From Magallana gigas (taxonomy: Eukaryota), in assembly GCF_963853765.1 (NCBI RefSeq), contig NC_088860.1, positions 37,138,001 to 37,202,000 of the forward strand: a stretch of 64,000 nucleotides of DNA, read 5' to 3'. The notes beneath the pieces are model-generated. The model saw only the letters and a program-made list of their open reading frames with translations. It ran no database searches and was not told where the DNA came from. The stretch's first letter is position 1. Every line of letters starts with the position of its first letter. A program made the position numbers and the translations under genes. Positions 31,143 through 50,616 of the stretch are shown here, piece after piece.

Positions 31143-31202
31143 TTTATTCAACCTCGGGCGTCTATTTACAAATGAGAGATGTGAATTTATAGTTGCGTCT
31201 TC
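31143..31202 (-). other. Gene A non-coding last exon with AGACGCCCG motif and AATAAA
   Basis: Donor ACAG|GTAATT at 31510/31509, 25 nt after the stop. Acceptor TTTTCAG|G at 31203/31202. Motif 31163-31155, AATAAA 31148-31143. Confidence 0.7.
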
Positions 31203-31534
31203 CTGAAAATAATAAAAAAAATTATATAATTTATAATTCGTCATAAAAATGAAATACAGTGGCAAAGATATTTGAAACTTTTACTTTGAGGTTTTACCGG
31301 ATGTGAAAACAGTTTTGAGTATAACCATAGTTTTTTTTAGATAAAATTTAAATTAGTTAATATTGTCAACCATATATTACTTGAAAAAAAAAAAATAAAA
31401 GTGTAATATTATTTTTAATTTGATATGAGACACCTCCCTTTTTCCGTTTTGCTTAACCAAGTCCTACATCTTTGTATTATATGCTTTTACTCCATGTTAA
31501 CATAATTACCTGTCTAACGACCAGTGCACCAGAC

Positions 31535-32836
31535 TTATTGGTAGGTGGTCACTGTGGGAGGGTAGTTGACTACCCTGGTGGTGAACTGACGACGCGGAAG
31601 ATACCTAATCCTTCGTTGAACAGACGAGTACCCGGGTAGAGTGTAAGTACTCCTGTAGCGCCTCATATATCCTAGGCCACCGTCAAGACCATAGTCATCG
31701 GAATAACCTGCCCCAGCGCTAGAAAGACCGGAGTAAGGTGTTGTATCGACAAAGGAACTGGTAGCCGAGAAGCCGGACCCTAGGGCACCGTCTAATCCTA
31801 TACCAGCACCAGCACCAGCACCAAGCTCGGCGGATGAGAATCGTCTGTTGTATAAGTCGGTGTATGTGGGAGATGTCGACTGATAGGACGCATAGACGGA
31901 AGATCTACCTCCTGTTGAAAGGGGTCCGTAGTAGGTACTTGGATAGATAGAAGAACTTCCTGTCAGTAGAGAACCCGATGAAGCTGAAAACCCACCATCT
32001 AGACCACCGAAATCACCAAACCCAGTCCCGCGGGGTCCATTAATATAGCTTTCATCATATAATCGATCTACTCCAAGTCCAGCAGTCGAGAGACCTGATC
32101 CACCGATTTCGACTCCAGCGGTTCCAAAGCCACTTAGTCCAGATCCACTTAGCCCAGTATCATATGGCCCCGGTCCATCTAATTCAGGTCCATAGGGTCC
32201 GGATCCACCATCTGGCCCTAGACCATAGGGTCCAGGTCCGTCTCTTGGTCCATAGGGTCCGGAGCCACCATCTGGCCCTAGACCATAGGGTCCCGGTCCG
32301 TCTCCTGGTACATAGGGTCCGGATCCACCATCTGGCCCCAGACCATAGGGTCCAGGTCCGTCTCCTGGTCCATAGGGCCCAGGTCCATATGGTCCGGGTC
32401 CATCTCCTATAGGTCCTAGATCATAGGGTCCAGGTCCGCCTGTTTCAGGCCCATATGGCCCCGGAAACGAAGTAGAGCCTACAAGGGGAACGGCTGCATC
32501 TGGTAAATCGGATGTATCCACACCGCCGTACAATTCCTCGTAAGTAATAGATGGCCTCCCAGTAGCTACAGAGCTTCTGACGAAGGTATTGTCCAGACCC
32601 AGAGAGGAGTCCCCACCGATACCGTAGAAGCGCCTGCTCAATGTTGTGGATGTTAAGGCCCCGACGTCATGGACCGAGTACACTCGGATGCCTCGGGCTC
32701 TTAGTATTCTGGCCACAATATCCGAGTATTGATTGTGATAACGGGGGATGAAGCGTGTCCCCAAGTTGATGACCTCGGGAGGGTTGCCGCAAACCGACGC
32801 TACTAGGAGTAGCACACAGAACCACAGTAACGACAT
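31535..32836 (-). CDS. Secreted Gly/Pro/Tyr/Asp-rich silk-like repetitive protein (gene A), 433 aa; putative shell-matrix or other extracellular structural protein
   Basis: ATG directly after acceptor TTTTCTCTCTTCAG (32837). Signal peptide MSLLWFCVLLLVASVCG, GPGPYG repeats, Arg/Tyr-rich C-terminus. The extra 30 N-terminal codons in the ORF track are intronic. Confidence 0.85.
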   Translation of the reverse strand: MSLLWFCVLLLVASVCGNPPEVINLGTRFIPRYHNQYSDIVARILRARGIRVYSVHDVGALTSTTLSRRFYGIGGDSSLGLDNTFVRSSVATGRPSITYEELYGGVDTSDLPDAAVPLVGSTSFPGPYGPETGGPGPYDLGPIGDGPGPYGPGPYGPGDGPGPYGLGPDGGSGPYVPGDGPGPYGLGPDGGSGPYGPRDGPGPYGLGPDGGSGPYGPELDGPGPYDTGLSGSGLSGFGTAGVEIGGSGLSTAGLGVDRLYDESYINGPRGTGFGDFGGLDGGFSASSGSLLTGSSSIYPSTYYGPLSTGGRSSVYASYQSTSPTYTDLYNRRFSSAELGAGAGAGIGLDGALGSGFSATSSFVDTTPYSGLSSAGAGYSDDYGLDGGLGYMRRYRSTYTLPGYSSVQRRIRYLPRRQFTTRVVNYPPTVTTYQ

Positions 32837-34252
32837 CTGAAGAGAGAAAATGTTAGTGAAATTACAAAGGGTTTTATAGCATATCCAGTGATAACAGACA
32901 ACAGTCTCGAACCCTTCCATCCCCATTTCTTTCTAGAATATGAAAAGGTGTCTGAGTGCATTGTTTGTCATGGGTATATATTGTTTTCCTTAATTCCTTC
33001 ATATCTTATCATGTACACATCAGCTTTTGCATTAAGGTCCACCAAATCTATTCATTGGAAGGAAAGGGTCACAAACCAGACTGAAAGTTACTGTTACAAG
33101 GTGTGCAAAATTATCGATTATGCCTGTATTATAATAAATAACGATCCAAGCTATCAAATCAGAATATGTCATATAGTTACTCACTCTTGTTTTAAAATTG
33201 TTAAAGGCATGGTAGATTTTCTATAATTTATTTAATTTATTGTGTAAAAAGGGGCATCTTTCATATGTTAAAGGATTATCATCCTTTTGAAATATATCAA
33301 ACTACATGTATATATCATATGTACAAATCAACTAATATAGCTGGATGGAAGACTGTCCGTCAAAGTTTAAAGTTAAAGCAGATCATGCAATTATTTTCAT
33401 CAAACTCTAGAAAAGCTTCATCAACACATTTATAAACAAAACGTGAGGTACTCGATCGTGTTTTCTTGATAAGGCAAAATAAAAGATTGTAGCAAATTTT
33501 AAAATGCTTCTATTTATCAAAAGAAACATATTTTACATCCATGTATAAACATGGTGCCCCAGCAAAATTCATTTTTCAGAGACAATCAGAAAAATGTTAA
33601 ATCAAGATAATTAATATTTCTCAATTATTATAAAGCAAATCGTGACTTAATTTATCGCTGAACTACCAATTGGGGAGGGGATTTAGCCGCCGAATTCTCA
33701 CTATTTTTTTTGGGGGGGGGGAGGGCTAGCGATCAGATATGAAATCCGTTGATAATACAACTTACAAATAATGTTTTCTTATAAACGAAGGTAAATTGCA
33801 TGTAATGTACGTCACGTCGAACACGCTTACGGAAAACTATGTCACGTGATATACACGTGGCACATACGAGTAACATTGTAAAAGGTTAACAGTATTTTAA
33901 AAGGCTTCCATATATGGGGCGATGCTTAACGTCTGCAGAGATGGAATGTAAGCAGTGTAACCCCAATCATAAATAACTTTTTTTAATCTCCCATGAAAAT
34001 GATTTTTCATGTGGAAGGAAAGGGAATCTATAAGAATGCATATATCAAAAGTTAGGTACACACAGACTAAAAAGAGAAATTCCGAAATTTATAAATATTT
34101 TTTTTTCCATTTTTACTGGGGGCCCTATGTCACTCCATCCTTATAGTTACTTATTGATATCATAATTCAAAATTTTAGTTACTTATACTGCAGTCGATAA
34201 ATGAAGCGTTGTAATACGGAATCTTAGGAAATATATTTGTGTAAAAACTTAC

Positions 34253-34338
34253 CCCCGTGGTTTCGTTAGACAAGGATTACTAACTAATGTGGACAGCAGA
34301 AAAGTTCTGGAAAGAGGTTTTATATAGTAGCCACGCCC
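34253..34338 (-). promoter_or_regulatory. Gene A promoter (GC box plus TATA) and non-coding exon 1
   Basis: GGGCGTGG (34338-34331), TATATAAAA (34326-34318), an ATG-free exon of about 40 nt, donor GGG|GTAAGT at 34253/34252. Confidence 0.7.
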
Positions 34339-48590: not shown

Positions 48591-50092
48591 AAATAAATGA
48601 ACTTATTTTAACTTGCATAGTTGATTTAACTGTGTAAATGAATCACAGAGGTAGCTTCAGATCTAGATACGGAAAGTGACCTTGATTTTCTAGATCATGA
48701 GATTTTCAAACACCTCAAATTATGATAGGGTTTACTGCAAATGATAGATCTAATATTGTTTAATAGTAGGCCTATTATTTATCATTCAGCATAGCAAAGT
48801 TTGGAATACTCTACAGAACATTCCCTTTTGTTACAATATGAGAGCACATGTGTATATCATGACACATTATTCTATTGTATCATTTAAAACCAATTATCTT
48901 CATTTTTGCAGATATATATTTGTATGTATGATTGAAGGAATTCATAACAACGTACATAAAAAGTCATGTTATTTTACACATTTTAATCATAATAATTGTA
49001 GAAATTTTTTTTTTTTTTCTAAATCTAAAAATAAATTTTTGTAACTTTTGTTATTAAAATTGATAAATTTCTTCAAGTTTTTTTTTATCCTTCTATGCTA
49101 CAAAATGGTGTCTGAAAATGTCATTGTTAGTTATGCAGATAAACAGGTTTGTTCTCGTTTAGTCTGTCCCAAGATATTTATGCAGCACATTTGGACGATT
49201 TTTTAATAAAAATACACATACCTGTGAAAGAAGTGCAATTGAAATAGGCTAGTTGAAAGGGATAATTTCCAAGATAATTTCATTGACACATTATCATCTT
49301 TCACTCGGAAAAATTCACAGGAACGAAAAAAGATTCCTTACGGAGATTTATTATGGGGAATGTTTACATTTTTTCTCCATTCGGAATACACTCGGAATAC
49401 ATAGCGCAATTTTACAACGTTATCATCCAGGCTTACTGCAATACAAAATCCCCGTAGACTTCACATTTTTTAGCATTGTATTGAAAGCTGATAAGCTAAC
49501 AGGGGCGTTTCGAATGAGAAATCTTGGAAATTTTTCATTCTTTTGAATGAACATCGTTTGAACCCTGAGGTATTTATAAATATCATGCAATAAAGCAAAA
49601 TGTAAATCTAGGATATCTTGGGACAGAGTATAGTAGCCTTCGCTCCTACTCCTAGTCTGAATTAAATGTCATTCTCTGTATAACAAGAGAACAAATCAAA
49701 GCTATAATAAAAGGTAGAGAAGTTGGATTCTGATTTAGTTAATTAAGTTGTTATTAGCATGGCCATTTTTAGAATATTTTGATTTTTTTTTAAAAAGAGC
49801 ATCATATTAAGGAAAATATTCAGCTTTAAAAGTTAAAGCATAAGGGTAATTTTTTGGAAAATAATAATTTATATCTAAAATAATTTTATCTTTAAAATTA
49901 GACATGTAGACAGATGTGTAATTTGTTGACTTATAGACCACACATGATAATTCTTTCACTTCAACATTCGACCATGTTTTGACAATTAAAATTTAAAAGA
50001 CCTCAGACAGATTTTGAAATCGTATTTTTGAAAAAGAAATACTATATATATGTTTATCGTTACCTTAAACGATATCTGTTGTCAAATCTATT

Positions 50093-50262
50093 AATCTAAT
50101 TAAAATTAGATCTTCGACCCGCTCCAAATAGATCGCTACACAAAGATCTAACGAAAACCCTTTCACAGGTCAAATCCAGTGACCTTTTCAGTCTACCAAT
50201 CAGCGTGCAATTTGTGTAGCGATCTATTAGGAGCGGATCAAAGATCTAATTTTAATTAGATT
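50093..50262. mobile_element. 170-bp MITE with ~55-bp TIRs, possibly Mutator-like
   Basis: AATCTAATTAAAATTAGATCTT..CGCTCC..ATAGATCGCTACACAAA and its reverse complement. Flanks CAAATCTATT / CAAACCTATT form a candidate ~10-bp TSD. Confidence 0.7.
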
Positions 50263-50491
50263 GCAAACCTATTAATTTAGAATCAACATGAATAACCATC
50301 TTTCTCAAAAATCAAAATTTGAGTTCCGCCACATTTTCTTGACGCTTGCCATCTACTATTGTCCTTCCGCGAAGCTCAATGCATAACTGTTACTAATCTA
50401 ACAGTTCAAACATTATTAGCAAATGTTAGTGACTTGCAAAGAAAACGAAATTATAGAAAACAAAAAGACAAACATAAGTTTGTGCTACATT

Positions 50492-50616
50492 TTTAATGTA
50501 AAAGTCCCCGGGCGTCTGACAAAAACATGAATATAACATACATTGAAAGTTTTATTTGTAAGCGACGATATTGTTACATCTGGTACCTCCAATCTTCAAT
50601 GGTCGATTTCAATAGC
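50492..50616 (-). other. Gene C non-coding last exon with AGACGCCCG motif and ATTAAA
   Basis: Candidate donor CAC|GTAACC at 50967/50966 (weak). Acceptor ATCTTTCAG|GCT at 50617/50616. Motif 50517-50509, ATTAAA 50497-50492. Confidence 0.7.

What the first reader, a model, noticed from the sequence alone, without database searches (positions are those of the whole stretch)
31143..50616. All three paralogs keep a 3'UTR intron and an AGACGCCCG motif just upstream of the poly(A) signal
Seen: donor 25 nt (A), 1 nt (B) and about 23 nt (C) after the stop, then a non-coding last exon. In each, AGACGCCCG (31163-31155, 43802-43810, 50517-50509) precedes AATAAA/ATTAAA by 6, 11 and 11 nt. The rest of A's UTR shows no clear similarity to B/C, so a GC-rich 9-mer kept at a fixed position stands out. 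Known: junctions less than about 50 nt after a stop escape EJC-dependent NMD. Inference: a conserved post-transcriptional element for 3'-end processing, localisation, stability or miRNA targeting in this family.
Basis: partly seen in the sequence, partly recalled or inferred. Interest (0 to 1): 0.72.

Follow-up and report, generated by a model that had tools for sequence, protein, structure and literature searches.

The report
Conserved GC-rich box beside oyster poly(A) signals
Three neighbouring Pacific-oyster genes for secreted silk-like proteins (one is the Shelk1 gene) each splice out an intron just after the stop codon and carry the same 12-letter GC-rich box a few letters before the poly(A) signal; other oysters keep the box unchanged while the DNA around it has diverged beyond alignment, so it is very probably functional, but its role is untested.

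Summary
AGACGCCCG occurs three times in 64 kb (0.01 expected), each time on the sense strand of one paralogue, 6, 11 and 11 nt before AATAAA/ATTAAA. A and C are each confirmed by one spliced RNA contig. B is confirmed by 25 raw poly(A)+ reads, and its depth drops about 80-fold just after ATTAAA.

The syntenic Saccostrea cucullata orthologue of A, a second oyster's A-type gene and a C. virginica-like B/C-type gene all keep the box. The invariant core in six sequences is AGACGCCCG-R-GG. Between species, only the N-terminal coding region and this terminal-exon block can still be aligned.

Gene A is the orthologue of C. nippona Shelk1. In that lineage a perfect Pumilio 8-mer overlaps the box, and its only substitution falls on the degenerate position.

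The box is in mature mRNA. I found no conserved fold, no Rfam family and no literature match.

Best reading: an ancestral, selected, linear RNA element in the core poly(A) region, probably bound by a sequence-specific factor. The mechanism is inferred, not shown. Mantle specificity and a miRNA match were not testable. Interest is moderate.

The parts
31535..32836 (-). Gene A coding exon (433 aa plus stop): Crassostrea gigas orthologue of Shelk1, a secreted Gly/Pro/Asp/Ser-rich silk-like protein. The acceptor of the 5'UTR intron lies directly before the ATG.
   Evidence: ORF. End-to-end match to C. nippona Shelk1 BAM72053.1, E=5e-161. RNA contig L009 carries other letters directly before the ATG, which is preceded in the genome by ...cttcag.
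31203..31509 (-). Gene A 3'UTR intron (307 nt, GT..AG). The exon junction lies 25 nt after the stop codon.
   Evidence: Spliced RNA contig L009 joins ...TTAGACAG to GAAGACGC....
31120..31202 (-). Gene A non-coding terminal exon. The 3' end is approximate because the poly(A) site was not mapped.
   Evidence: L009 covers 31205-31153 at 100% identity. The block aligns with S. cucullata and L011.
31163..31170 (-). Pumilio-type 8-mer TGTAAATA (UGUANAUA), overlapping the box by 1 nt. Found in the A lineage only.
   Evidence: Present in all three A-lineage sequences. The only substitution in the roughly 40-nt block (A/T) is at the degenerate N position.
31152..31163 (-). Box AGACGCCCGAGG in gene A.
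   Evidence: Present in spliced RNA.
31143..31148 (-). AATAAA poly(A) signal of gene A, 6 nt after the 9-mer.
   Evidence: Sequence. Conserved in both A-lineage relatives, L010 (the syntenic orthologue) and L011. Use as the real 3' end is inferred.
41003..42244 (+). Gene B coding exon (413 aa plus stop), a paralogue of C that shares an N-terminal domain with A.
   Evidence: ORF. 61% identical to C. N-terminal alignment with A. Raw poly(A)+ reads at about 14-28x, all on one strand.
42246..43701 (+). Gene B 3'UTR intron (1456 nt, GT..AG). The junction lies 1 nt after the stop (TAAG|GT).
   Evidence: Joint seen in 25 raw reads with 19 starts in X21 and in one X3 contig. Depth at the start of the intron is about 1 against 27 in the exon.
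43702..43842 (+). Gene B non-coding terminal exon. The 3' end is approximate.
   Evidence: Depth is 19.7 in 43696-43827 and 0.25 in 43828-43950 in the poly(A)+ raw-read run X21.
43802..43813 (+). Box AGACGCCCGGGG in gene B.
   Evidence: Among the variants listed, those in the terminal exon and just beyond its 3' end lie at 43765, 43770, 43838 and 43848, and none lies inside 43771-43837; 54 further variant rows were not shown.
43822..43827 (+). ATTAAA poly(A) signal of gene B, 11 nt after the 9-mer.
   Evidence: Sequence. Read depth collapses just downstream.
50990..52057 (-). Gene C coding exon (355 aa plus stop), RefSeq LOC105319237.
   Evidence: ORF. Exact product found in GCA_963853765.1 and in RNA contig L002. 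Named.
50617..50966 (-). Gene C 3'UTR intron (350 nt, GT..AG). The junction lies 23 nt after the stop.
   Evidence: L002 joins ...CCTAGCAC to GCTATTGAAATC....
50478..50616 (-). Gene C non-coding terminal exon. The 3' end is approximate.
   Evidence: L002 covers 50619-50566. The rest is inferred from its close similarity to B.
50506..50517 (-). Box AGACGCCCGGGG in gene C.
50492..50497 (-). ATTAAA poly(A) signal of gene C, 11 nt after the 9-mer.
   Evidence: Sequence. Use is inferred by homology with B.
52069..52397 (-). Gene C 5'UTR intron. The non-coding first exon ends at 52398.
   Evidence: The first 20 nt of L002 map to 52417-52398 and the rest starts at 52068.

Best explanation
AGACGCCCG-R-GG is an ancestral cis-element kept by selection in the non-coding terminal exon of an oyster family of secreted silk-like proteins: Shelk1 (gene A) and its B/C paralogues.

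Every gene has one plan: a 5'UTR exon, one coding exon, an intron 1-25 nt after the stop codon, and a short terminal exon. That terminal exon carries, in order, UUUGU/UGUA, the box, A(A/U)UAAA, a CA-containing cleavage region and a GU/U-rich tail.

The box therefore sits inside the core poly(A) region and is exported in the mature mRNA as a linear, unstructured sequence. I propose that a sequence-specific RNA-binding factor reads it there. That factor would set how efficiently the 3' end is made and/or the later fate of these highly expressed messages (stability, translation). In the Shelk1 lineage it would act beside an overlapping Pumilio site.

The introns lie too close to the stop codon to trigger EJC-dependent nonsense-mediated decay, and they give a single-coding-exon gene the benefits of splicing.

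Shown: the position of the box, its presence in mRNA, the splicing, and the conservation. Inferred: action at the RNA level, the binding factor, and the effect.
For: - The motif is real and restricted to this family: 3 hits in 64 kb against 0.01 expected, all on the sense strand although the genes face different ways.
- It is in spliced mRNA (L009) and in poly(A)+ raw reads whose depth falls from 19.7 to 0.25 just after the ATTAAA.
- Orthologues keep it. S. cucullata L010, syntenic through the FGGY exon downstream, and L011 carry a roughly 40-nt block identical to A's apart from one substitution. C. virginica-like L012 keeps the B/C-type block.
- Between species only the N-terminal coding region (about 70% identity) and this block (77-88% over 58-108 nt) align. 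Introns and flanks do not.
- A-type and B-type flanks differ consistently within each lineage, so the shared core is old and not recent gene conversion.
- The predicted donor stays 1-42 nt after the stop in all six sequences.
- The box keeps two CpGs in a genome with CpG observed/expected of 0.72.
- There is no conserved secondary structure, which favours a linear site.
Against:
- The core is 10/12 G+C, unlike known U-rich or UGUA upstream elements, and I can name no RNA-binding protein with this specificity.
- There are only six sequences from at least three species, all in one gene family. L011's species is unknown, and L012 is called C. virginica only by protein similarity.
- Introns in the orthologues are predicted from sequence only.
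- The paralogue match alone is weak evidence (P=0.048 for whole exons).
- Some of the block's conservation may reflect ordinary constraint on the poly(A) site.
- One X3 contig reads through B's poly(A) signal.
- An orientation-fixed DNA element would look the same in these data.
Confidence: 0.5

Rival explanations
1. The box is a target site for a microRNA or other small RNA. In this reading the paralogues share a seed-match box, as the Drosophila E(spl)/Brd genes share K, Brd and GY boxes, and a mantle or developmental small RNA represses the whole family.
For: A short linear motif is conserved across paralogues and orthologues in the 3'UTR. It lies near the end of the UTR and no fold is needed.
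Against: The invariant core is 12 nt, longer than a seed match. There is a single copy per UTR. No complementary sequence lies elsewhere in the window. No paper text holds the complementary RNA 9-mer. From memory only, no conserved lophotrochozoan miRNA seed fits. No oyster miRNA catalogue was available, so this is untested rather than refuted.
Confidence: 0.15
2. The box acts as DNA, as an orientation-fixed binding site at the 3' end of the gene for a transcription factor or a termination or chromatin factor. Candidate resemblances are a GCCNNNGG AP-2-like site or an AGAC/GGCGTC Smad-like site. Its presence in the mRNA would then be incidental.
For: The sequence is GC-rich with CpGs and looks more like a typical DNA-factor site than like known RNA elements. 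Its conservation equals that of coding exons. The resemblances to AP-2 and Smad sites are recalled from memory and were not tested.
Against: The box always lies on the sense strand, with fixed order and near-fixed spacing to the PAS. It is embedded in a block whose conservation spans UGUA to the cleavage region and then fades into a compositional GU/U-rich tail, which is the pattern of a transcript element. No copy occurs in the promoters or elsewhere in the window.
Confidence: 0.15
3. The box has no function of its own. It would be a remnant of the ancestral terminal exon that survives by chance, or because it is wedged between constrained poly(A)-site elements.
For: A shared 9-mer between two such exons arises in about 5% of shuffles. 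Regions next to the PAS evolve slowly in general (established knowledge).
Against: Twelve positions, including two CpGs, are unchanged in six sequences from two paralogue lineages that split before the Crassostrea/Saccostrea divergence. Meanwhile the 6-11 nt between box and PAS, and everything upstream, differ between the lineages. The position-restricted chance estimate is 0.2%.
Confidence: 0.12

Closest known systems
Auxiliary upstream sequence elements (USEs) of metazoan poly(A) sites, for example the SV40 late and prothrombin USEs, CFIm UGUA sites, and C-rich alpha-CP/PCBP sites near the PAS of globin and collagen mRNAs (from established knowledge)
   Same: It lies within a few tens of nucleotides upstream of the hexamer, in the last exon. 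It is conserved together with UGUA/UUUGU, the hexamer and the cleavage region. It occurs in very highly expressed secretory-type messages.
   Different: The core is a specific 12-mer with 10/12 G+C and two CpGs, neither U-rich nor a C-tract. It sits only 6-11 nt from the hexamer. An effect on cleavage is not shown.
Family-wide 3'UTR boxes of paralogous genes: the K box, Brd box and GY box of Drosophila E(spl)/Bearded genes, later shown to be miRNA seed matches (from established knowledge)
   Same: It is a short linear motif shared by otherwise unalignable 3'UTRs of tandem paralogues and kept in orthologues.
   Different: There is one copy per UTR. The core is 12 nt, not 7-8 nt. It is tied in position to the PAS. 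No matching small RNA is known.
Pumilio/PUF response element UGUANAUA
   Same: The A (Shelk1) lineage carries a perfect 8-mer overlapping the box by one base. The only substitution among three species is at the degenerate position.
   Different: It is absent from B and C (UGUCAGAC) and imperfect in the C. virginica-like copy (UGUAUCAG), so it cannot explain the shared box.
3'UTR introns exempt from nonsense-mediated decay (the 50-55-nt rule)
   Same: Real, efficiently spliced introns lie 1, 23 and 25 nt after the stop, and predicted ones lie 1-42 nt after it in orthologues.
   Different: Nothing unusual. This part is an ordinary instance. What is less common is the full plan of a single coding exon flanked by two UTR introns, kept across the family.
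Shelk1 / Shelk2 silk-like proteins of oysters
   Same: Gene A matches C. nippona Shelk1 from end to end. These are repetitive low-complexity secreted proteins of the class discussed in PMC6542584.
   Different: B and C share only the N-terminal domain with Shelk1. They are named 'uncharacterized' or 'glycine-rich cell wall structural protein-like' in databases.

Membership tests
NMD-exempt 3'UTR intron | An intron downstream of the stop codon is removed from the mature RNA | tested here: met
   A: contig L009. C: contig L002. B: 25 raw reads plus one contig.
NMD-exempt 3'UTR intron | The exon junction lies less than about 50-55 nt after the stop codon | tested here: met
   25, 1 and 23 nt.
NMD-exempt 3'UTR intron | The transcript is insensitive to UPF1/EJC-dependent decay | not testable with these tools
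   This needs knock-down or inhibitor experiments.
Poly(A)-site upstream auxiliary element (USE) | Lies in the pre-mRNA within about 60 nt upstream of the hexamer that is used | tested here: met
   The box is 6-11 nt upstream. Use of the site is supported for B by the depth drop and inferred for A and C.
Poly(A)-site upstream auxiliary element (USE) | U-rich or UGUA-type sequence | tested here: not met
   The core is 10/12 G+C. Only the adjoining UUUGU/UGUA fits.
Poly(A)-site upstream auxiliary element (USE) | Mutation lowers cleavage and polyadenylation | not testable with these tools
   This needs a reporter or in-vitro cleavage assay.
miRNA seed-match box shared by paralogues | A motif of 7 nt or more is conserved in the 3'UTRs of paralogues and orthologues | tested here: met
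miRNA seed-match box shared by paralogues | Complementary to nucleotides 2-8 of an expressed miRNA of the species | not testable with these tools
   No oyster miRNA set was on hand. A paper search for the complementary 9-mer found nothing relevant. There is no complement in the window.
Pumilio response element | UGUANAUA in the 3'UTR | tested here: met
   This applies to the A lineage only: UGUAAAUA, UGUAUAUA and UGUAAAUA. It is not met in B, C or L012.
Rfam cis-regulatory RNA families | A match to a curated covariance model | tested here: not met
   No hit in any terminal exon at E<=1. No shared fold was found either.
Shelk1 silk-like protein | Full-length similarity to the named Shelk1 protein | tested here: met
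   Gene A against BAM72053.1: E=5e-161, with both termini conserved. B and C share only the N-terminal domain.

The most novel reading that the evidence does not exclude
AGACGCCCGRGG is the recognition code of a so far unknown RNA-binding factor, or a new GC-rich class of poly(A)-site auxiliary element. It would mark a post-transcriptional regulon of oyster matrix and silk-like protein mRNAs, possibly extending beyond this family to other mantle secretory genes, and would have been kept since before the Crassostrea/Saccostrea split.
Probability: 0.15. Interest if true: 0.65.

Novelty: new variant of a known kind. Interest (0 to 1): 0.45.

Why it matters
Shell and matrix protein genes of molluscs evolve very fast, and almost nothing is known about how their expression is controlled after transcription. 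Here a 12-nt box is better conserved than the coding sequence, sits at a fixed place in the poly(A) region and is shared by old paralogues. That makes it a concrete, short and easily mutated handle. It can be used as bait to fish for the binding factor and as a search term to ask whether other mantle genes belong to the same control circuit. The confirmed gene plan, one coding exon between two UTR introns, also corrects and extends annotation: gene B has no product in the protein collection although it is expressed. If the box turns out to be an ordinary by-product of poly(A)-site constraint, the finding is of local interest only.

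Tried and rejected
- **Coding terminal exon.** Rejected. The main frame meets a second stop before the junction in A. Orthologue alignments have indels that are not multiples of three. The block includes the PAS.
- **Conserved RNA structure.** MFE and pair-probability folds of six spliced 3'UTRs give no shared helix, and the box is about as unpaired as the rest. A small hairpin around ATTAAA in B and C is not kept in L012.
- **Known RNA family.** Rfam at E<=1 gives nothing in the terminal exons.
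- **Transposon or repeat origin.** There are no further copies in 64 kb, in the 21-kb L010 or in the 7-kb L012. The 2-mismatch hit at 62007 lies in an unrelated coding exon, and about one such hit is expected by chance.
- **Recent gene conversion between A and B/C.** Rejected, because each lineage's flanks are kept in its own orthologues.
- **Pairing with another part of the locus, or a local miRNA.** No complementary 7- to 9-mer of interest was found.
- **More family members from JGI metagenomes.** The motif pattern gave 0 hits and the protein-profile scan found no relatives.
- **Literature.** No open paper deals with oyster Shelk1. There is nothing on LOC105319237, on the run accessions or on the motif as an RNA element.
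- **Look-ups that failed.** P0004, P0006 and P0019 are not on record, so C. virginica RefSeq and S. echinata loci could not be read.
- **Limits from caps.** Only one read-laying run was allowed, so only gene B has raw-read evidence.
- **Earlier notes of this scan.** They added nothing on this locus.

Full report
**Where and what.** The window is Pacific oyster (Crassostrea/Magallana gigas) DNA. Gene C's exact product is found on GCA_963853765.1, record OY970752.1. Three long ORFs encode secreted, Gly/Pro/Asp/Ser-rich, low-complexity proteins with no Pfam domain:
- A: 31538-32836(-)
- B: 41003-42241(+)
- C: 50993-52057(-)

B and C are close paralogues, 61% identical with differences mostly in repeat blocks. 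A shares only an N-terminal domain with them: E=1e-6, with P(P/R)x(V/F)INLG and further invariant columns. A matches 'spider flagelliform silk-like protein Shelk1' of C. nippona from end to end. C is RefSeq LOC105319237. The C. virginica relative is named 'glycine-rich cell wall structural protein-like'. Shelk-type proteins are treated in the literature as silk-like repetitive low-complexity shell proteins (PMC6542584).

**Checking the observation.** AGACGCCCG occurs exactly three times on both strands of the 64 kb, at the coordinates given, against 0.01 expected. Each copy is on the sense strand of its gene and extends to AGACGCCCGRGG. The hexamers follow after 6 nt (A, AATAAA) and 11 nt (B and C, ATTAAA).

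The three 3'UTR introns are real:
- A: RNA contig L009 joins 31510 to 31202 and runs through the box.
- C: RNA contig L002 joins 50967 to 50616.
- B: laying four runs on 40000-43950 gave the joint 42245|43702 (GT..AG) in 25 raw reads with 19 different starts from a stranded poly(A)+ run, and in one contig of another run.

For B, exon depth is about 14-28, depth at the start of the intron is about 1, and depth in the terminal exon is 19.7, falling to 0.25 beyond 43828. B's transcript therefore ends just after the ATTAAA in the great majority of molecules, although one X3 contig reads through.

The genes also have a 5'UTR intron. For C this is shown. For A the acceptor lies directly before the ATG. 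The family plan is a UTR exon, one coding exon and a UTR exon.

**Is it more than chance?** B and C are recent duplicates whose whole terminal exons align, so they count once. Between A and B, a shared 9-mer of any sequence appears in 4.8% of dinucleotide-preserving shuffles of the two terminal exons. It appears in 0.2% when required within 30 nt of the hexamer in both. On its own this is suggestive only.

**The orthologue test.** They have not.
- The Saccostrea cucullata gene (L010) is syntenic with A, with an FGGY-kinase exon downstream in both species. It has a donor 15 nt after its stop, an intron of about 370 nt, and a terminal exon reading CATTTGTATATAGACGCCCGAGGTTGAATAAAT.
- A genomic contig from another oyster run (L011, species unknown, protein about 60% identical to A in the N-terminal region) has the same block with TGTAAATA.
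- A C. virginica-like contig (L012) encodes a product 87% identical to XP_022345740.1, with the differences mainly in repeat number. It keeps the B-type arrangement: the stop inside the donor (TAAG|GT), an intron of about 790 nt, and ...TTTTGTATCAGACGCCCGGGGACTTTTCATTAAAA....

In the six-sequence alignment the invariant run is AGACGCCCG-R-GG. Each lineage keeps its own flanks. blastn between species finds only the N-terminal coding region (about 70% identity) and the terminal-exon block (77-88% over 58-108 nt, with the core at 100%). Introns, the repeat-rich coding part and downstream DNA do not align. The box has thus been held in two paralogue lineages since before the Crassostrea/Saccostrea split, and recent gene conversion cannot explain it.

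**Anatomy of the block.** Reading 5' to 3' in the mRNA:
1. TCAT...TTTGT(A)
2. the box
3. 6-11 lineage-specific nucleotides
4. A(A/T)TAAA
5. about 20 conserved nucleotides containing CA dinucleotides
6. a GU/U-rich stretch that is conserved in composition only

This is the layout of a canonical metazoan poly(A) site with one extra GC-rich piece inserted between the UGUA-type element and the hexamer. In the A lineage, TGTA(A/T)ATA forms a perfect Pumilio 8-mer overlapping the first base of the box, and the single substitution in the block falls on its degenerate position. B, C and L012 lack a canonical 8-mer.

**What it is not.**
- It is not coding: there are stops and non-triplet indels.
- It is not a known RNA family.
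- It is not a conserved hairpin.
- It is not a repeat or transposon fragment.
- It is not matched by a complementary sequence nearby.
- The 2-mismatch hit at 62007 lies in an unrelated coding exon.

**Mechanism.** The best-supported reading is a linear RNA element, part of the extended poly(A) region, recognised by a sequence-specific factor. That factor would tune 3'-end formation and/or the later fate of the message. The introns lie close enough to the stop to avoid EJC-dependent decay while giving a single-coding-exon gene the benefits of splicing; this last point rests on established knowledge. The position of the box, its presence in mRNA, the splicing and the conservation are shown. Action at the RNA level and the effect are inferred.

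The rivals are a small-RNA target site, which could not be tested without an oyster miRNA set; an orientation-fixed DNA site; and hitch-hiking on poly(A)-site constraint.

**Limits.**
- Poly(A) sites of A and C are not mapped.
- Tissues of the runs are hidden, so 'mantle-specific' is untested.
- Orthologue introns are predicted from sequence only.
- The species of L011 is unknown.
- Only six sequences were compared.
- The genome could not be scanned for the box at other genes.

**Verdict.** The interpretation that the box is a conserved element is supported, and its post-transcriptional role is plausible but open. This is a new, family-specific variant of a known kind of feature, a conserved 3'UTR element next to the PAS, and it is of moderate interest.

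Noticed in passing
window 41003-42244 (+): Gene B is clearly transcribed and spliced. However, its product is not in the protein collection, either by exact look-up or as a close hit: the best hit is 65% identical. It may be unannotated or absent from the RefSeq assembly.
   Followed up: partly
window 50992-51049 and 51202-51259 (-): Gene C's C-terminus carries a 58-nt internal duplication at 95% identity (GVSGFDGD..GSVGSPG.D). This extends the ORF past the place where B and the C. virginica-like copy stop inside the donor (TAAG|GT). The GTAAC donor itself is kept.
   Followed up: partly
window 43828-43950 and beyond: One contig of run X3 continues from B's terminal exon through the ATTAAA to beyond 43950. 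It comes from an allele with an 8-nt and a 2-nt deletion at 43867 and 43879. This points to a minor read-through or longer 3'UTR isoform.
   Followed up: no
window 40027-40081 and 42508-43167: A stretch of about 52 nt at 40027-40081 collects very high depth on both strands in all four runs, with many different flanks, so it is a dispersed repeat. A second repeat expressed on both strands lies inside B's 3'UTR intron.
   Followed up: no
window 52420-52700 (-) versus L012 902-1182: The promoter and first-exon region of gene C is 70% identical over 295 nt to the C. virginica-like locus. No such match is found upstream of gene B.
   Followed up: no
window 27385-27480 versus L010 20464-20559: An exon of an FGGY-family carbohydrate kinase lies downstream of Shelk1 in both C. 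gigas and S. cucullata. This conserved synteny anchors the orthology.
   Followed up: partly
window 56485-57509 (+): ORFs whose translation looks, by eye, like part of a reverse transcriptase suggest a retroelement fragment. It carries the only other AGACGCCC 8-mer in the window, at 57193 on the minus strand.
   Followed up: no
window 35849-35935 (-): There is a weak Rfam match to the plant MIR8675 family (34.8 bits against a gathering score of 90.8). I take it as chance.
   Followed up: no
L009 1256-1282: The RNA contig for gene A runs into Illumina adapter sequence directly after the box. The contig therefore says nothing about where the transcript ends.
   Followed up: yes
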